Assembly (NCBI GenBank): GCA_965285935.1
Contig: OZ260666.1
Span: 51,088,001-51,152,000 of the forward strand
DNA: 64,000 nucleotides
Direction: 5' to 3'
Source of the DNA: Ophelia neglecta
Taxonomy: Eukaryota
Position numbers and translations under genes: made by a program. Positions within the stretch are counted from its first letter, which is position 1. Each line of letters begins with the position of its first letter. This document shows positions 8,500 to 64,000 of this stretch, piece after piece. The notes under the pieces were generated by a model. It was not told the origin of the DNA and searched no databases. It worked only from the letters and a program-made list of their open reading frames with translations.

Positions 8500-9260
8500 T
8501 AAAAATGTTCACCCAAGTTAAAATAGGCATACCCAATGTATTGAACACTTGCAGGTAGCCGTATGCAGGGAATGTTTTATGACTATAAACCTGACCTTGA
8601 CCTTTGCTTTAAGCGCAATGCATGTGTCCCAAATTCTCATGGTACATGATAGGCATGCCAAATGTATTGAACACTAATAGGAAGTCGTATATATATTAAA
8701 GTGGATATTTTGATGGCTACAAACTTAATTTTGAACTCTGCTTAAAGGTCAAATCATGTAGACTAATCTGAATTTTCCAACTCTGTGTAGCTTAATGGTG
8801 CAAGGTATCCATGAATAATGGATTGAACACTAATAGCAAAATATACTTGATAAATGTAATGAACAATAATAGGAAGTCCTATACAGGGAACCTTTTGAAG
8901 GATACAGAATTGACCTTGACATCTGCTTGAATGTCAAATCCTGAGATCCGAGTTTTCAAGCCTTCATATGGCTTAAAGACAGGCATTTCAAATATATGAA
9001 ACATTATTCGTAAAATAAGCAAAATTATAAAGCAGACTCCTGCTAGAAAAGCTGCCCCCCCCCCCCACTTGGTGTATGAAGCAGTATAGGTAGCCTGTTG
9101 GATAAGAAGCAGTATATGTAAGTAGTATAACAAACTAGTAATTGGTTGCCCATTTGGATCCATTATGGTAGCCTTTAGGGAAGGATATCTTGGGCATTTT
9201 ATAGAGTTCTCAAATTCGACCTTGGGGTCTATTTCAAGGTCAAACAGCAGAAATCATGAT
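8500..9260. repeat. Degenerate ~125-nt satellite-like array with TGACCTTG/CAAGGTCA motifs
   Basis: GGCAT..AATGTATTGAACACT..AGGAAGTC recurs at about 8526, 8652, 8820-8870 and 8982. TGACCTTGACCT at 8592. Confidence 0.55.
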
Positions 9261-16820: not shown

Positions 16821-17655
16821 AAAACTAGGCCAACGCTGTCGGGGGGCCGACAGCAAGGGGTATACCGGCGAATGTATGCAACAGTCAATGGGGAACTTGG
16901 CATAAGGCGAGGTAGTGAATATGGCAGTTTTTAGTTGGCAAGAAAGATAACGACCTAAACTAATTTTTGTTTAGGTCATTAATTAAGTTAACTAGTTAAC
17001 TTATTACACAGTACTAGTTAACTTATTACACAGATTGTAGTAGGTTCTATATGACCTCAATAATAATGCAGGTCATTCTTATAGTTGGTTCCATATGACC
17101 TCAATAATAATGCAAAACGACCTTAACTAATTTTTTTCAGGTCATTAATAAAGTTAACTAGTGTACTTATTAGTAGGTTCCATAAGACTTCAATAACTAG
17201 TTAACTTATTACACAGATTGTATATAGTTATTACATGAATCATGACACAAAAGTTCAAGCCAATATCATCTATACTTTTGAATATTTGATAGAAAATGTG
17301 TTTTTGACATAATAAATTAATTATTTTAACTAATTAATAATTATCCGAAATTCACCAGAATAGATCCAGGTCTTCCTCTCAATAAGGTCTATGGCTTAGA
17401 CAAATTTGATAAAGATGTATCAAATATGTTTTGGGCAATTGCAGAAAATGCGTTTCTGACATAATTAAATAATTGTTTTAACAAATTAATAATTATTAGA
17501 ATTTCACCAGAATCTAATTAGTTCCTCCTCTCAATAAGGTCTATGGCTGTGTCAAATTTAAAAAAAGATGTAAGAAATGGTTTTTGAGTTATCGCGTTAA
17601 CGACTAAAATCTGTGGCGGCGGCGGCGCGGTGCTAGTGATTCCATAATATCCGCA
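16821..17655 (+). mobile_element. HINE/DINE-like (Helentron-associated) non-autonomous element with internal tandem duplications
   Basis: Starts AAAACTAG with palindrome GCTGTCGG..CCGACAGC (16835-16854). Repeated ACTAGTTAACTTATTACACAG and CCATATGACCTCAATAATAATGCA units; duplicated TTCACCAGAAT..TCTCAATAAGGTCTATGGCT core; (GGC)n near the 3' end. Confidence 0.6.
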
Positions 17656-55909: not shown

Positions 55910-58900
55910 CTACGGAATACACACATTTTCTGCCCTGTTCAACATCTCCAGAATCAGAGGTGGCAGTTCCTGGTCAGTTTCCATTCTCAAATGTAGAACT
56001 CTCTCTGCACCTAAAACAACCAATTAAACTTGTTATCTAAAATACAAAATCAACTCAGAGCGGGCCCACTTTAAACCTCCCCAGCACATCATTACAAAAT
56101 TAGTATGCCTTCTTGGTAGCACAGTTCTCATTTGTAGGCCTACTCACCAGGCCAAATAATAAATTATTCAATAATGAAGAATTAGTGAAACAGAAGAAGA
56201 AAAACATAACTTGACAGATCAGAATATATTATAGGAACCACTAATATTAACCTTTGACACTAATACTCCTCAAATCAGTCAGTTTAAATAACATTTTGGC
56301 AAAGCTATGCGGCTGGGACACTCTTCGTTGTCGTACATAGTGCTTGAAAGCCTCGAGGATTGGCTCCTGGAGTTTCTCCACCTTCCCTGGCTCCTCCAGT
56401 CCAGATCGGTCTAAGTAGTACAAACAAATACGGGCAAATTAACAGGCAAACTATTACATACTTACTGGTCATTTATATCAATAGTGAGTACCTCTGACAG
56501 TAAAGATAATGACCAACATAGCTTAAATATAATTATTAAATCATACAATACTAAAGGTTTTAATACAAACTCTTACTGACCAGCAAAACAAGTTATACAT
56601 TTGATTTATTTGCTTATTTTTTGCTTATTATTATTTTTCCACATTTTATTAAAGGTGTTTAACCAATACATGATTTCTGACTAGCAGCTGAGAGTATTCT
56701 ATTCCCAGGTAGCAGTGAAAAGAGATTTTGCATTACCTCCGCTAACCAGGCATATCGCAGATAAAAGGGCATATTCACTGTCATCAACTTCCATTTGGTG
56801 TAGAGATTTTGCAAATCTAAAAATAGTATCTGTGAGGGTGCCAAAACCCCCGACTTCCAACTGTTTTCTGGTGAGTGTCAAGCCACTGCTGAAGGTCATT
56901 GTTTCTTCTTCATCATCATTGGTGGCATTGTAGCGTATACCTAGACGCAATACCTAGATTTGGGAAGAAAACACAAAATAAGCCAGAAGTAATGGGTGCT
57001 TACTCATTTCTCTAGGAACTCATTTACATATGCTGTTTTTCTCCTTTGTGTCTTATGCAAATTCAGAGAAAATTCCCAACCCAAATCTATTTTAAGGTAT
57101 GCTGCCAATTGGCCTACAAATTAAAGTAGGTAAGGATGTGAATCTTCGGCAGTCATTACTGAAATAACCACCCTCTGCTTATTGTAATCAGGCCCTAGTA
57201 CATACGCTTGGTTGTATCAGTAACGATAGCAGTCAAGCCATAATAAAATCACCTGGTTGTATCAGTAATGATAGCAGTCAGGCCATAGTACATACGCTTG
57301 GTTGTATCAGAAATGATAGCAGTCAAGTCATAGTAAAAGCACTTGGTTGTATCAGTAATGATAGCAGTCAGGCCATAGTACAAGCACCTGGTTGTATCAG
57401 AAATGATAGCAGTCAAGTCATAGTACAAGCACTTGGTTGTATCAGTAATGATAGCAGTCAGGCCATAGTACAAGCACTCGGATGTATCAGAAATGAAAGC
57501 AGTCAGGCCATAGTACAAGCACCTGGTTGTATCAGAAATGAAAGCAGTCAGGCCGTAGTACAAGCACTTGGTTGTATCAGAAATGATAGCAGTCAAGCCA
57601 TAGTACAAGCACTTGGTTGTATCAGTAATGATAGCAGTCAGGACATAGTACAAGCACCTGGTTGTATCAGAAATGATAGCAGTCAGGCCATAGTAAATAC
57701 AGTAGTTTGTATCAGTAATGATAGTCTATGATATAAAGGAGCATACACAAACAACATCACACTCACTGTATGGAAAGTAGTTAACTGAGTGCTGGATTTT
57801 ACAACTTACCAGTATTTCCAGGCAGGCTGCTTTGAGCAAAGTAATTTGATCAGAAGTGGTTAGAGTCCCAAAGCCAGGCATTTGTTTACCAAAATTGACA
57901 ATTCTTATGATTCCAGCAGTAGAAAGTTCATTGACTCTCTCCCACAGAAGAACATTGCCTTTTTGTAACTCCTCTTCAGTCTGCAAAAATGGTTTTAATG
58001 GCAATGAAAAAACTATACAGTGCAAGCCCCTCACTCACCTCCCCACCTATGTAAAGGATAGTAAACATGTCTGTTGGACAGTCCACTCCAAACAGTCTAA
58101 ATTAAAGTATAAGCACAAAAATGTCAAAAAAACTAACACTTGCAATGTCTATAAAAGCAAAGAAAGAAAAAATTGTGTTCACACAAAATAACCTTCCCCC
58201 CTCACCCCCTTGCACATCAATATCTTAATAGACCACTGATAAATACCCCTTGGGGACTGGTTTTAATTTCATTAAAAATGGGAAGGAAAGAGAAGATCTA
58301 GGAAATTAGGCTCTCATCCTGAATAAGAAACTAAATAGAGAGAGAGAGAGAGGGCACTGACCAATTTGAACTTGTCATCATCTCCAATGAGTGGACTTGT
58401 CTCCTCATGGGCCTTCACCACTTTGTCTATGATCTCCTGGTCTTGACTGGTCAACTCCTCACAGGACTGGGATGAAGAACAGCCCTCCTCCTTCTGTTTA
58501 CGCTTCTTATTTCGGTCATTTCTAACGGCTGTTTTAAAGTTGAAAGTAAGCACCATGAACCAGTTTGTTTCAACAACAAAAAATGATATGCAGAAATTTG
58601 GATGCCAGACAACAGATGATGCCATTCACAAAAAATGTTGACCCCCTTCTACATGACATCATTATAGCTCTGAATCAGAATATCATTTACATTAGACAGT
58701 GGTGGTGGGGGTGAACAGTACAGATCAAGTTGCCTTTCACTCCCCCCATTTTAAAATCAAATAGCTTCAACCTATAGAGAGAACCATGTTCATATAGTAT
58801 CAGATTAATTATTTTCATAAATGGTAATAATAAGGCCACACTTTATATCTAAACCTGGGAATAATTAGTGCTTACATCTTAAAAACTGATATAAACCAAA

Positions 58901-60295
58901 TGCAGCATAACCATGCTGTTGAATTAAGGAAATTAAACTTGTGGGTTATCTTACCTTCTTTTGACATGCCCTGGGCAAAGCATTTCTGCAGACGACAATA
59001 TTGACACCGGTTTCTTGTAGTTTTATTAATCACACAACATTTCTCTTTATGGCAAGTATACTGCATATTCTTTTGAACACTTCTACGGAAAAAGCCCTAA
59101 AATTGAATATATTCATTTTATAAATCACATGAATGTTGTCAAACCTCTCATGCCATTTTCAATAATAATTAAATGAAAATCAAAGCCTCAGCAATATGAC
59201 ACATATCTAAATCCCCTGAAGACGGGAAGTGAGGACAGGAGTAAATGGACCAGCCCTGCTCACCTTGCAGCCCTCACAGGAGCTGACCCCGTAGTGGTAA
59301 CCCGAGGACTTGTCATTGCACACCACACAGGGCTTGTAGCTACGAGGTGGGGGAGGGGGCGATGGACTCAGGTCTCCAATGGTGGTGGAGCTCTGTAACT
59401 CAGACTGGTAACCTCCGGAAGGGAAGTTAAACATCATATCTGAATAAAAAAAAGGTGAGAGGCCAAAACCAACATTAACACCAAAAGTTGAAATAATTTA
59501 AAATACAATTAAACTGGAGTACCTGTTTTTTCTTGTTCCAAATCTAAATGATTTATTTGGGATAAATAGTTTAAACTTGGTTTTTTCACAGTAAGTAATG
59601 ATTGGGAGATGAAAATTCGGGCTTGTGTATGAACAGTTTATGAACAGGCACGTAACTAATCTGGGACTTACGATGGTTAATTCCCATGTTTGTATTGTAC
59701 ATCACAGTTTTGTGGTGGTCAGTGCTGCCATTTGGGGAGAACTGATGGTAGCCCGATGCCTCTATCTTGGTCACTCCTGGAGCCTCCATCCGATCATTTT
59801 TAATTGAGTTTGGCAGCTCAGTTTTAATGGGCGACCCATTGGTGCTTCCTGACATTAACATATTCCGCCAAAACCCTGTAATATGACAAACATTTTATAT
59901 AAGCCGATGGTTGGTTTGAATCTCATCAAAATTTGAAATCTACAGAAATAAAAAATCTCAAATCCACAGAGATGTAAAGAGTGTACTGACTTTGATTTCC
60001 ATAATTTTGAACAACAATATCTTTAAATGTTTTTGAAAAAGATAGTAATGATCCACACCAATAACTTTTCAGTTGTGCAAGAAATGGTTCACAAGATATC
60101 CTTGGGCTATAAGTTTGCAGTGACCATTTTCTCTAGCGCAGATGGTTAAAAGTAGAAATAAGGGAACATAGCTAGTGACTAAGAGATGAGAAACTGACCT
60201 GAAGCCACGTCAGTGGTGGGCGATCGAAGCTGAGTGGTAGGAGCCATTTTCTTGTCGCCGTTTTCTGTGGTGTTGATCAACTGCTGGTGGAACAT
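55910..60295 (-). CDS. RAR: Retinoic acid receptor (NR1B), about 477 aa
   Basis: Exons 60295-60199, 59875-59672, 59439-59264, 59096-58955, 58528-58362, 57980-57810, 56953-56737, 56410-56252 and 56010-55910 (1434 nt). [47 protein letters not shown]-box [41 protein letters not shown]-2 PPLILEML. An in-frame TGA lies upstream of the ATG within the first exon. Confidence 0.95.
57188..57726. repeat. 45-nt minisatellite, about 12 copies, in RAR LBD intron
   Basis: Unit GGTTGTATCAG(T/A)AATGATAGCAGTCA(G/A)GCCATAGTACAAGCAC(T/C)T; period 45 (57211, 57256, 57301...). Confidence 0.95.
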
Positions 60296-60297
60296 GT

Positions 60298-60312
60298 TTA
60301 TCTGATATCCAT
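60298..60312 (-). promoter_or_regulatory. uORF (MDIR*) ending 2 nt before the RAR ATG
   Basis: ATG GAT ATC AGA TAA-AC-ATG within exon 60334-60199. Confidence 0.55.
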
Positions 60313-62149
60313 GAGGAAATAGACCTCAGCAGCACTGAAAATGTAAGAAACCCTTAACAACTGGACAATATAAACCTATGGATCTGACCCGCAGCACACG
60401 TGAGGGCTGGGTGCTGTGGGTTGGTGGTTGGAAATACAAGAGAAACACCCAGAAGGCATCAAATTTCAAAGATTCAAAGAAAAAAGTTTAAGAAATAATG
60501 AATTTCTTTGCATTTGAATAGCTATTATGTAAAACAAGGCAATTAGAGAAGTAAAACCCACCTTTTAAAAAGTATAATAAATGTGTCTGTCATAAAGTTA
60601 TCTCCTGAGAACACATGTATAAATAAAGTACGAACTTAAAGAGACCCTTCTTTAACACCACTAGAAATGTCCAGAAATGCAAAAGAAAGTGAACTTATTT
60701 TTAATACAAAAACTATAACAGGCCAAATAAAGCATAACCCCTGAAAAAATCAGTATAGCCCTCATGATCAGCAAGCCCGGAGGACACCACAAATCACAGG
60801 CACTTTTTTAATTAATGTGCCAAAATAATAATGACGATCTCTAATTTTAATAAATCAAAATTATATGATTCGTGTACTTACACAAAGATATGTGCAGATC
60901 ATTCCATTCTGTCTTTTTTACCGCTTATCACATCATGGTTTTTCTGTCATCATCCTGCAGAAAAATATATATCTTGTTAAAAATTGCAGAACATTAACAA
61001 GATATTTCCAAGGCACCAAACTAAGGGTCAGTGCTGGAAAATAATGTTGACGTTTTTTTTCTGAGTTTTGCATTATGCTTTTAAAATGGATGAGATTTAT
61101 TTGCAACTGACAGGTCCGAATGTTATAAACAAGAACAACAGTCGAGGTACATAAAGACTAATACAATTTAATTAGACATTTTATATTGATGGTTCATGCA
61201 GTGGTATATATTTGGGAAAACTGCTTGTCAGATCTACGTGACAAGTATCTGTGGGAATATTTTAAATGCAGACAAAGTTATGTTTGAATCTGAGAAAAGA
61301 CAGTAATGCCTAGTTCTGATGTTCTAGGGTCTGATGTAACTTTTAAAACCTACTTGCCCGAAACTTTCAGCTTTGTTCAGATAAGACACATGTAAATGGA
61401 GCTGAAATTCACTTTCCCAGTCAGTTGGGCATTGGCTTACATCACATCCTGTGTTTGGTGCAAGTCAACTCACTGCCCAAGGACTAATTAATTTAAAATC
61501 TCCCAATGTGCATCAATGAGCAATAACTCTGGAATACTTAAGTACAGGTGATCTCACCATACGCAGACCCCAATATATATGTGATGTGTGTATCAGAGCC
61601 AGGGGACTGATGTAGGGTATAACCAATAGCCTGAACACTGCCAGCATGACCTGCTTTCATGATGTTATGTAATACCTCAAGTCTTACACACTTGGTCAAT
61701 GCAAAATTGATATCCTGCCAAGTTAATCTGCTGGTGACATTTATACCACAAAGTACTTGCATTGTTTCTGCAGCATTTCTGAACCCATAAACCAGATTTG
61801 TAAGCATAAATTGTATCCCAATAAGTTCTTTCTCAACAGCTACAAATATGTTACATAAATTTAGTAACTTTAAGATGCTTAACACAGATCAGCCGGTGGA
61901 GCTTTCAGATTTCAGACCCAGGGGCTATTAATGAGCATAACCAAAAGGTGAACAAATCTATATCCAAATAGCCTGATATTTGGAAATCATGTTACATACA
62001 TATATGTAAATTGTGTTAAGAATAGTAATGATATAAGTAGGTGAGTTACTAGGTAAGTTATATCTGTTCAGAAGACTATGGACAGCAACAAGGACATGGT
62101 AAGCATGTCATGACTAGATAGTGGAGGACTGTATGTTGGGTGACATAAA

Positions 62150-62161
62150 GGGTCATGACCC
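62150..62161. promoter_or_regulatory. IR0 (TREpal-like) nuclear receptor element GGGTCA-TGACCC
   Basis: Perfect 12-bp palindrome of RGGTCA half-sites, 1.85 kb 5' of the RAR ATG. Confidence 0.4.
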
Positions 62162-62550
62162 CTGGCTAGTTGGAGAATTCCTATTAGGTAATTCTTACAC
62201 CAGATGGATGACTGTGGTTGAAAATCCCCTACATCAACAACCTGTAGCTACAAGTCACTGCCAAAATGGAGTTAGTGGCCCAATCGAAATATCATGGTTT
62301 GCTAATGTCAGGTGCATTTGAACAGAGCTATGGTCATTGTAGCTTGGTGTTAATACATCCATACACATCCCAGGACAAACACAAATCCCATCAGGTCAAG
62401 AGCAAGCTTGCAGCGTTACAAAATTATTGGCTAACAATGGAAAAAACTCAACAAAATTCAATGGTCTCACTTTTAGAACTATTTACTACTGAAAAGTTAC
62501 AGTCCTCCCCCCCCCCCCCACACACACACACACACTTCAACCCTAAACAG

Positions 62551-62597
62551 AGGTCATAGCAAGGTCAAGTCAGGCCATCTGACCTATGAAGTGACCT
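62551..62597 (+). promoter_or_regulatory. DR5 RARE (AGGTCA-TAGCA-AGGTCA, 62551-62567) in a half-site cluster 5' of the RAR coding exons
   Basis: Followed by AGGCCA (62572), TGACCT (62580) and TGACCT (62592); further half-sites at 62393, 62643 and 62669. Confidence 0.55.
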
Positions 62598-64000
62598 TGA
62601 ACAGGCCACTGACATGAAAGGGAGGAAAAGGGTTGTCACATATGACCTTATTTGAAATCGGTAGTGCTGGGTCAAGACAAGCACCTGAAAGCAAGTCTGA
62701 TCCCTTTGGAAGTAAACACAGAGGCAGGAAGTGATCAAGCCATTAAGATGCAGGTGTTTATAGGAATACTACCCCAGATAGCACAAAGCCTTGGCCCAAC
62801 ATTTGGCCAGCATGGGACAGTGCTACCTTGGAAGCGGGTGACCGAGGAACACCTGAGAGTCGGTGCCCAGACATGTAGCATTCCATAACCACTAGGGAGT
62901 GTCAAGTTGTGGTATATTGGGACTTTTTTTGTGAGCACACAACAACAGATTTGATTTGGATGTACCTAGTCTAGCTGTATCACTTCTGAATTATTCGATA
63001 CATGTATGTTCAGCTTAACTGTGTCACTTCTGAATTATTAGATACGTGTCTCTTACTTGGAATGCCACAGACTCGATTCCTGTGGCCCTAGAAGACTCAA
63101 CTTTTGGAGCATCTGAACCAGTATATATATACAACTAAATCAGAATAAGTATTCTGTCACAGTCTCAGGGATTAGGTTTGATAAAAACTTTGTGCTCTAG
63201 AAACAAACAGGCCAATTTGGTTTTTTTCTTGACCAGTCAAAGAGGGATGATATATGGGATGTTAGAATCACAGCTTTCCCATTTTCGTCGGGTTGGCAGT
63301 TAAATGTCCGGTGCCGGAGACGATACCACAGAAAACGTGAAGAGTTTAGCCAAAAGCTATTCTAATTTATAGTAGAAAGGCTGTAGTTTTCAGACAGTCA
63401 GATGTTTGAGTAGTCATGAAGCCGGTAAACATTTGGCAAACCATAATTTGCTTCCTTCATGCACATCTGAATACATGTATCATGTTCATTCACTATATGC
63501 ATGTCAAAATTCAATGAAGTCCATCTATTGAGGAGCTGCTATTGCAAGTTACTGGACATACAGATAGATTCCTATATATCTCCTATATTCTTTGCATGGA
63601 GGGGGAGGGGAAATTACGGGTGATAATGGTTCTAGCCTCTGTTCTTTGTGCCAACCCCAAAAAATCACCTAAAACAATGATTCAGCTTGTTCATAAACCT
63701 AACATTCATGTGATTTAATGTGGCTTAATATAAATTTACATTAAAGTACATGTTCCAATTAAAGTATGATTTTTATGAAGGGTTTAATTACTACAGGTAA
63801 CTGCCCTTGAGACAGACCTATAAGCATGGCCACAGGGCAGGCAGACAGGCTGTAATTGCTGATCACTGTACAGGCACCTAGCACTAATGAGTGTCACCAT
63901 TATATTCCCATTTCGAATATGCACACAATACCAGGGGATGTTTTAATGTTTGAAATGACAGCCTTAGCAGAATGGGGAGAGAAGTGTGTAAAGGACAATA

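What the first reader, a model, noticed from the sequence alone, without database searches (positions are those of the whole stretch)
62150..62675. Candidate autoregulatory RARE cluster 5' of an apparently RA-insensitive invertebrate RAR
Seen: within about 525 bp, 1.8-2.4 kb 5' of the first RAR coding exon (which has a splice acceptor, so this is probably a 5'UTR intron), there is a perfect IR0 (62150-62161) and a perfect DR5 AGGTCA-N5-AGGTCA (62551-62567). The DR5 overlaps an imperfect DR4 and is followed by two TGACCT sites spaced by 6 nt, with three more lone half-sites nearby. Established: DR5 is the canonical RAR/RXR element, and vertebrate RAR isoform-2 promoters are autoinduced through DR5 RAREs. 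Inference: RAR autoregulation may predate chordates and persist here as a loop driven by unliganded RAR repression or RXR ligands, even though this receptor's pocket looks RA-incompetent. Caveat: TGACCT-rich repeats are common in this genome (e.g. 8500-9260).
Basis: partly seen in the sequence, partly recalled or inferred. Interest (0 to 1): 0.8.

Follow-up and report, generated by a model that had tools for sequence, protein, structure and literature searches.

The report
Receptor half-site cluster beside RAR gene
A single-copy stretch of about 100 bp packed with nuclear-receptor binding motifs, including a perfect retinoic-acid-type DR5, does lie about 2.2 kb upstream of the first coding exon of a spiralian RAR gene, but only the motifs themselves suggest that it regulates that gene.

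Summary
All motifs are at the stated coordinates: IR0 GGGTCATGACCC, a perfect DR5, an overlapping imperfect DR4, two TGACCT sites 6 nt apart, and three lone half-sites. RAR lies on the minus strand, with its putative first coding exon at 60199-60334.

The segment is single-copy in the 762-Mb genome, so it is not a high-copy repeat. Five perfect half-sites in 98 bp cannot be explained by random placement.

The background is noisy, though. Perfect DR5s occur 1413 times genome-wide against 183 for the control, mostly in 11-bp tandem arrays and interspersed repeats. AGGTCA sites cluster more than 95% of comparable hexamers.

No alignable relative exists; the best RAR match is about 72% identical. 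Eight other spiralian RAR loci have no perfect DR5, and degenerate DR5s are no commoner there than DR1, DR2 or DR4. No RNA runs exist.

CpG depletion (o/e 0.12) places the cluster in DNA methylated in the germ line, probably RAR intron 1, about 7 kb from a sharp switch to CpG-rich DNA. It is therefore not promoter-proximal like the vertebrate RAR-beta2 element. A thyroid-hormone-receptor gene lies head-to-head upstream, so TR/RXR is an equally good candidate binder.

Autoregulation remains an untested hypothesis. I could not establish that this RAR is RA-insensitive. Other first-stage notes of this scan flag similar half-site arrays elsewhere in this genome.

The parts
62150..62161 (.). Perfect 12-bp palindrome GGGTCATGACCC (IR0, resembling the classical palindromic element TREpal)
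   Evidence: Read directly. No polymorphism in the read-derived contigs.
62393..62398 (+). Lone AGGTCA half-site
62507..62535 (.). Simple repeat, C13 followed by (AC)8, directly beside the cluster. It is the only part of the segment with matches elsewhere in the genome.
   Evidence: Read-derived contigs break here.
62551..62567 (+). Perfect DR5, AGGTCA-tagca-AGGTCA
   Evidence: It is the only perfect DR5 in the 80 kb examined.
62562..62577 (+). Imperfect DR4, AGGTCA-agtc-AGGCCA, sharing its first half-site with the DR5
62580..62597 (-). Two TGACCT sites (AGGTCA on the minus strand) 6 nt apart. They form a 12-bp tandem unit present in 1.9 copies. The second site, with its flank, reads TCAAGGTCA on the minus strand.
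   Evidence: Tandem Repeats Finder: 62580-62601, period 12.
62560..62599 (.). Imperfect inverted repeat, CAAGGTCAAGTCA / TGAAGTGACCTTG (85% complementary), that pairs the plus-strand and minus-strand half-sites
   Evidence: pair I6. As single-stranded DNA it folds at -10 kcal/mol, z = -2.45.
62643..62648 (-). Lone TGACCT half-site (reads ATAAGGTCA on the minus strand)
   Evidence: A G>T SNP lies 6 nt away at 62654.
62669..62674 (+). Lone GGGTCA half-site
60199..60334 (-). Putative first coding exon of RAR: acceptor AG at 60336-60335, ATG at 60295, donor GT at 60198-60197, and a short upstream ORF at 60312-60298
   Evidence: Read. No RNA support is available.
55913..59875 (-). Remaining RAR coding exons: A/B domain, two DNA-binding-domain exons with the P-box CEGCKG, hinge, and four ligand-binding-domain exons
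   Evidence: ORFs, tblastn hits, Protein Data Bank matches.

Best explanation
The cluster is a single-copy array of AGGTCA half-sites that most likely arose by local micro-duplication. It has 11- to 12-bp units, one set on each strand, and together they form an imperfect palindrome.

It sits in CpG-depleted DNA, which indicates methylation in the germ line. This is probably the first (5'UTR) intron of RAR, inside the 16-kb interval between the divergently oriented RAR and thyroid-hormone-receptor genes.

By sequence, RXR heterodimers could bind it: the DR5 suits RAR/RXR, and the DR4-like element and IR0 suit TR/RXR. I judge it more likely than not to be a neutral product of a mutational process that is very active in this genome, not a selected autoregulatory element.

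Shown: the motifs, their uniqueness, the genomic background and the genomic position. Inferred: the origin by duplication, the intronic position and the neutrality.
For: - Periodic units and the inverted repeat are visible.
- Perfect DR5s number 1413 genome-wide against 183 for the control, mostly in 11-bp arrays with an AGGTCA core.
- The subclass AGGTCA-T-NNN-A-AGGTCA, to which this DR5 belongs, numbers 300 against 12.
- In a random 200-kb sample, 17% of AGGTCA sites have a neighbour within 40 bp, which is the 95th percentile among hexamers of similar abundance.
- No perfect DR5 occurs in 8 other spiralian RAR loci, and DR5 spacing is not enriched there over other spacings.
- CpG o/e is 0.12 in 62150-62675 and 0.16 over 60335-69400, against 0.81 from 69401 onward. 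The site is therefore not promoter-like, unlike the vertebrate RAR-beta2 DR5.
- Other first-stage notes flag similar half-site arrays at unrelated genes in this genome.
Against: - The segment is single-copy, and its composite arrangement is unique in the genome.
- Random placement would give fewer than one cluster of 5 perfect sites in 98 bp in the whole genome (my estimate from the rate).
- The hexamer cores are intact at 17 of 18 positions in the plus-strand half, while the spacers differ. That pattern would also fit selection on the cores.
- Roughly 1 DR5 locus occurs per Mb (my estimate from the first 100 places), so the chance of one within 10 kb of the RAR 5' end is about 1%. That figure is post hoc.
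- Spiralian RAR/RXR bind DR5 in vitro (PMC5821490).
Confidence: 0.5

Rival explanations
1. The cluster is a RAR/RXR response element through which RAR regulates its own gene. It would act by repression when unliganded or through RXR ligands, as an intronic enhancer or silencer.
For: - A perfect DR5 lies within a dense, single-copy half-site cluster 2.2 kb from the first coding exon.
- The RAR P-box is CEGCKG.
- Annelid and mollusc RAR/RXR bind DR1, DR2 and DR5 (PMC5821490, PMC9656583).
- RAR is treated as a direct RA target in amphioxus (PMC8387019), and vertebrate RAR isoform-2 promoters are auto-induced through DR5s (established knowledge).
Against: - There is no conservation, expression or chromatin evidence.
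- The motif is absent from 8 other spiralian RAR loci.
- The genomic background of DR5s is high.
- The site lies in CpG-depleted DNA, not in a promoter-like context.
- A perfect DR5 also lies 1 kb from the DNA-binding-domain exon of an unrelated NR2C-like gene.
Confidence: 0.15
2. The cluster is a working nuclear-receptor response module, but it is used by receptors other than RAR. Candidates are TR/RXR, via the DR4-like element and the IR0, and monomer-binding receptors of the NR5A/ERR/NR4A type, via the extended site TCAAGGTCA. It may act on RAR, on the divergent thyroid-hormone-receptor gene, or on both.
For: - The thyroid-hormone-receptor gene lies head-to-head upstream. Its DNA-binding-domain exon is at window-equivalent position 97886, and its ligand-binding-domain exons match TR-beta structures best, at E = 1.7e-25.
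- IR0 and DR4 are the classical TR element types (established knowledge).
- TCAAGGTCA and GCAAGGTCA extended half-sites are present.
- The RAR-to-THR interval holds 21 AGGTCA sites against 10.4 expected, P = 0.003.
Against: - Outside the core cluster the enrichment is not significant: 15 sites against 10.3 expected, P = 0.10.
- The CA flank before AGGTCA is the commonest flank genome-wide, at 16% of sites.
- The DR4 is imperfect.
- No functional data exist.
Confidence: 0.2
3. The cluster is a decayed relic of a transposable element or of one of the genome's AGGTCA-core 11-bp minisatellites. It is too diverged for BLAST to recognise and has no function.
For: - The DR5 belongs to the T...A spacer class carried by arrays and by an interspersed family that holds two DR5s 122-165 bp apart.
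- A poly-C/(AC)n tract abuts the cluster.
- A 95-bp interspersed repeat lies 1.1 kb away.
- Foldback motifs of the TGACCTT...AAGGTCA type also occur in the Owenia and Pecten RAR loci.
Against: - No second copy is detectable even at E <= 10.
- Perfect cores beside unrelated spacers are not what uniform decay of an old copy would give.
Confidence: 0.12

Closest known systems
Vertebrate RAR-beta2 / alpha2 / gamma2 promoter DR5 elements (beta-RARE), which give RA auto-induction of RAR
   Same: A direct repeat of RGKTCA half-sites spaced by 5 nt, linked to the 5' part of a RAR gene. In both cases it lies downstream of a probable distal promoter.
   Different: The vertebrate elements sit about 35-55 bp upstream of a defined transcription start and are conserved across vertebrates. 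This one is about 2.2 kb from the nearest exon, in CpG-depleted DNA that is probably intronic. It is embedded among extra inverted half-sites and has no conservation or expression evidence. Its half-sites are AGGTCA, not GTTCA-type.
Thyroid-hormone response elements: the palindromic TREpal (AGGTCATGACCT), and DR4 elements such as the one behind auto-induction of Xenopus TR-beta
   Same: An IR0 palindrome and a DR4-spaced pair are present, next to a thyroid-hormone-receptor gene.
   Different: The IR0 uses GGGTCA half-sites. The DR4 has one mismatch (AGGCCA). The thyroid-hormone-receptor coding exons start at least 13.6 kb away.
Nuclear-receptor elements born in repeats (for example the DR2 elements in primate Alu), and the AGGTCA-core 11-bp tandem arrays of this genome
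   Same: The half-sites are phased at 10-12 bp and were created by duplication. The DR5 spacer belongs to the T...A class that is 25-fold over-represented here.
   Different: This copy is single-copy, has only 2 to 2.5 units per strand, and combines both orientations. No family membership could be shown.

Membership tests
DR5-type retinoic acid response element (RARE) | Two RGKTCA half-sites as a direct repeat with a 5-nt spacer | tested here: met
   AGGTCA-tagca-AGGTCA at 62551-62567.
DR5-type retinoic acid response element (RARE) | Bound by the RAR/RXR heterodimer of the same organism | not testable with these tools
   Only indirect evidence. The P-box is CEGCKG, and published work shows annelid and mollusc RAR/RXR binding DR5 (PMC5821490, PMC9656583).
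DR5-type retinoic acid response element (RARE) | Makes a linked gene depend on the receptor or its ligand | not testable with these tools
   No RNA runs exist for this organism.
DR5-type retinoic acid response element (RARE) | Conserved at the orthologous locus in related species | tested here: inconclusive
   No close relative is available; the best RAR match is 72.6% identical. At motif level, 8 distant spiralian RAR loci have no perfect DR5, and DR5 is not enriched over other spacings.
Auto-inducible RAR isoform-2-type promoter element | Lies immediately upstream of a transcription start | tested here: inconclusive
   No transcript data. As a proxy, CpG o/e is 0.12 at the cluster, and the nearest CpG-rich (promoter-like) DNA starts at about 69.9 kb. 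This argues against a promoter-proximal position.
Interspersed repeat / transposable element copy | Several similar copies elsewhere in the genome | tested here: not met
   62100-62500 and 62540-62700 match only themselves at E <= 10. Only the C/AC simple repeat has other matches.
AGGTCA-core 11-bp tandem array | Three or more head-to-tail units of about 11 bp with similar spacers | tested here: inconclusive
   The plus-strand half has 2 perfect cores and 1 imperfect core at 11- and 10-bp spacing, with dissimilar spacers, and Tandem Repeats Finder does not call it. The minus-strand half is called at period 12 with 1.9 copies.
Thyroid-hormone response element (DR4 / IR0) | Half-sites arranged as DR4 or as a palindrome without a spacer | tested here: met
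   IR0 at 62150-62161. DR4 with one mismatch at 62562-77. Binding was not tested.

The most novel reading that the evidence does not exclude
RAR and the thyroid-hormone-receptor gene form an ancient head-to-head gene pair. On this reading the half-site cluster in RAR intron 1 is a shared auto- and cross-regulatory module of that pair: the DR5 for RAR/RXR, and the DR4-like element and IR0 for TR/RXR. Receptor feedback of the vertebrate type would then exist in a spiralian, and would operate even if this RAR senses retinoic acid weakly or not at all.
Probability: 0.1. Interest if true: 0.7.

Novelty: new member of a known kind. Interest (0 to 1): 0.3.

Why it matters
If the cluster is bound and used, it would be the first cis-regulatory evidence for RAR feedback outside chordates. 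It would also give a handle on what a weakly liganded or unliganded spiralian RAR actually controls.

As it stands, it is a well-defined, cheap target for DAP-seq, ATAC-seq or a reporter assay, not a result.

The analysis also carries a warning for the rest of this scan. This genome produces perfect DR5s and phased AGGTCA arrays at many times the control rate. Nuclear-receptor motif finds here therefore need copy-number and background checks before they are read as regulation.

Tried and rejected
- **RNA evidence.** The run search found no RNA run, only three DNA-like runs from one sample. Laying them confirmed the sequence and showed SNPs and indels. No differences in the 110-bp core, against about 1 expected, says nothing about constraint.
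- **Alignment with orthologous non-coding DNA.** This was impossible. The profile-free protein search and the word search gave no RAR closer than about 72% identity. One look-up, for Lineus P0183, found no record.
- **High-copy repeat or TE.** Rejected.
- **Structured RNA, tRNA or SINE.** Nothing found.
- **THR upstream of RAR in other species.** I looked in the 10-kb flanks of the other species' loci. Only RAR's own ligand-binding domain cross-matched, so the synteny stays untested elsewhere.

Full report
**Observation.**
- A perfect palindrome, GGGTCATGACCC, at 62150-62161.
- A perfect DR5, AGGTCA-tagca-AGGTCA, at 62551-62567.
- A DR4 with one mismatch that shares the second half-site (62562-62577).
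- Two TGACCT sites 6 nt apart (62580-62597).
- Lone sites at 62393, 62643 and 62669.

RAR is on the minus strand (ORFs, tblastn). The putative first coding exon is 60199-60334, with an AG acceptor at 60336-60335, an ATG at 60295 and a GT donor at 60198-60197. This gives the stated distance of 1.8-2.4 kb. Contigs built from reads of three runs of one sample cover 62544-62653 without a difference.

**Is it more than chance?** In the window AGGTCA occurs 52 times against 34 expected. Over the 80 kb made up of the window and 16 kb further upstream, 62551-62648 is the densest AGGTCA cluster. AGGTCA is also almost the only hexamer that is not simple sequence to reach 5 copies in 100 bp. A random 200-kb sample of the genome has 0.66 sites per kb, the same as the control hexamer, and no cluster of that density. 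At that rate, random placement would give fewer than one such cluster in the whole genome (my estimate). So the cluster was made either by local duplication or by selection.

**Is it a repeat?** No.
- BLAST of 62150-62675 against the 762-Mb genome found only the C13(AC)8 tract again.
- 62100-62500 and 62540-62700 matched only themselves at E <= 10.
- The composite of a DR5 plus an inverted pair is unique in the genome.
- A 95-bp interspersed repeat lies outside the finding, at 61326-61418.
- Rfam and tRNA scans found nothing.

**Background in this genome.**
- Perfect AGGTCA-N5-AGGTCA occurs 1413 times against 183 for the reversed control. Most are in 11-bp tandem arrays that share the AGGTCA core.
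- The subclass with a T...A spacer, to which this DR5 belongs, occurs 300 times against 12. It includes an interspersed family carrying two DR5s 122-165 bp apart.
- In the random sample, 17% of AGGTCA sites have a neighbour within 40 bp, against a median of 4% for hexamers of similar abundance. Most are inverted pairs from one repeat family that is also present at window 16973-17144.
- The CA flank that makes CAAGGTCA is the commonest flank genome-wide.
- Other first-stage notes on this genome flag similar half-site arrays near Hox4, P450 and ZFHX genes.

The cluster itself shows 11- to 12-bp units and an imperfect inverted repeat that pairs the two strand sets (pair I6). The single-strand fold is modest, at z = -2.45.

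**Relatives.** I searched the exons apart, by reference, and built no joined model. The RAR exons match annelid RARs best:
- Capitella, 72.6% identity.
- The siboglinids, about 67%.
- The Platynereis RAR ligand-binding-domain structure 6eu9, the best hit among solved structures.

No closer relative is reachable, so non-coding alignment is impossible.

As a weaker test I fetched eight spiralian RAR loci with 10 kb upstream: Capitella, Owenia, Lamellibrachia, Ridgeia, Tubulanus, Liolophura, Lingula and Pecten. None has a perfect DR5. Across all nine loci, DR5s built from RGKTCA half-sites number 3, against 3, 4 and 5 for DR1, DR2 and DR4. The half-site clusters in Owenia and Pecten are foldback or tandem repeats. 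Nothing supports an ancient RAR-linked DR5, although enhancers turn over at these evolutionary distances.

**Genomic setting.** Upstream and divergent from RAR lies a thyroid-hormone-receptor gene. Its DNA-binding-domain exon is at C9:51185886, which is window-equivalent position 97886, and its ligand-binding-domain exons match TR-beta structures best, at E = 1.7e-25. A possible first coding ORF lies at window-equivalent 76283. The interval between RAR and that ORF holds 21 AGGTCA sites against 10.4 expected (P = 0.003). Outside the core cluster the excess is not significant, at 15 sites against 10.3.

CpG o/e is bimodal in this genome.
- RAR gene body: 0.28.
- 60335-69400: 0.16.
- The finding itself (62150-62675): 0.12, with a TpG/CpA excess.
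- From about 69.9 kb onward: a sharp switch to 0.81.

In invertebrates with mosaic methylation, CpG depletion marks transcribed gene bodies, and transcription starts stay CpG-rich (established knowledge). I therefore infer that the RAR start lies near 69.9 kb and that the cluster is in intron 1. It differs from the promoter-proximal vertebrate beta-RARE.

**Ligand question.** This RAR shares the H3 valine common to spiralians (bioRxiv 10.1101/2025.03.09.642214). It keeps the H5 arginine and the beta-turn serine. It has alanine where human and Platynereis RARs have the H3 lysine. Platynereis RAR binds RA weakly (PMC5821490) and mollusc RARs are reported not to bind it, so whether this RAR is RA-insensitive cannot be decided here.

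**Reading.** By sequence the site could bind RXR heterodimers, and annelid and mollusc RAR/RXR bind DR5 in vitro (PMC5821490, PMC9656583). Beyond that there is no evidence of use. My odds are:
- about 0.5 for a neutral product of micro-duplication;
- 0.12 for an unrecognisable repeat relic;
- 0.2 for a working element used by TR/RXR or other receptors;
- 0.15 for RAR autoregulation as proposed.

The finding is a reasonable bench hypothesis, but it deserves much less than the 0.8 interest first assigned.

Noticed in passing
L053:1766-2765 (G000:C9:51184386-51187523, window-equivalent about 96.4-99.5 kb); DNA-binding-domain exon at C9:51185886-51186023 (+): A thyroid-hormone-receptor gene lies head-to-head with RAR, with RAR on the minus strand and THR on the plus strand. 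Vertebrate THRB and RARB have the same divergent arrangement, so the linkage may be ancient. THR was not found within 10 kb upstream of RAR in 8 other spiralian loci, which is too short a reach to test the synteny.
   Followed up: partly
window-equivalent 69.4-70.0 kb (L013:9400-10000): CpG o/e switches sharply from about 0.1 to about 0.8-0.95 at about 69.9 kb and stays high to at least 80 kb. The RAR body and 9 kb upstream of it are CpG-depleted, while the side toward THR looks like unmethylated DNA. This is probably a methylation domain boundary and the shared promoter region.
   Followed up: partly
L014:6283-6885 (+) = window-equivalent 76283-76885: A 200-aa ORF rich in Ser, Pro and Thr lies inside the CpG-rich domain, where GC reaches 0.49. 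It may be the first coding exon of THR or a separate gene.
   Followed up: no
window 61326-61418: A 95-bp interspersed repeat with at least 39 copies at 74-80% identity across the chromosomes. Read depth rises over it.
   Followed up: partly
window 16973-17144; L029:9313-9843; L030:8107-8449: A repeat family carrying phased TGACCT/AGGTCA inverted pairs (TGACCTcaataataatgcAGGTCA). It accounts for most of the close AGGTCA pairs in the random sample.
   Followed up: partly
genome-wide, e.g. G000:C2:28463683/28463845 and C5:77613684/77613821: An interspersed family with two perfect DR5s, AGGTCATCAAAAGGTCA and AGGTCATCAGAAGGTCA, 122-165 bp apart. There are also many 11-bp tandem arrays that all share the AGGTCA core but differ in their spacers. 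Why this core is favoured is unexplained.
   Followed up: no
L047:370-386 (G000:C1, about 120.24 Mb): A second perfect DR5, AGGTCAcaaaaAGGTCA, lies about 1 kb from the DNA-binding-domain exon of an NR2C (TR2/4)-like or RXR-like receptor gene.
   Followed up: no
L019:58-74 (Tubulanus polymorphus, about 9.9 kb upstream of the RAR coding start): A DR5 made of AGTTCA half-sites, AGTTCActcgaAGTTCA, which resembles the vertebrate beta-RARE type. It is a single occurrence and consistent with chance.
   Followed up: no
window 60312-60298 (-): A short upstream ORF, ATG GAT ATC AGA TAA, lies in the putative first RAR coding exon, ahead of the main ATG at 60295.
   Followed up: no
window 62038-62060 (+): A 12-bp tandem duplication gives two consensus 5' splice-site-like sequences, AGGTGAGT and AGGTAAGT, on the plus strand, which is the THR orientation.
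   Followed up: no
window 61219 and 62321: Structural polymorphisms appear in the read-derived contigs: a 28-bp deletion at 61219 and a 29-bp insertion after 62321. SNP density is about 0.9% over 60.1-64.0 kb.
   Followed up: no
window 57249-57653 (-): A tandem repeat in a RAR intron reads through as a 134-aa ORF with repeating units of the form [15 protein letters not shown].
   Followed up: no
L017:24920-29650 and L021:18620-23876: A GRASP55/65 gene lies just downstream of RAR, convergent with it, in both Lamellibrachia and Lingula. I did not check this in the window.
   Followed up: no
window-equivalent 68997-69022 and 67673-67693: Two more everted AGGTCA pairs: TGACCT-N14-AGGTCA, with palindromic flanks, and TGACCT-N9-AGGTCA. 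Both lie close to the CpG boundary.
   Followed up: no
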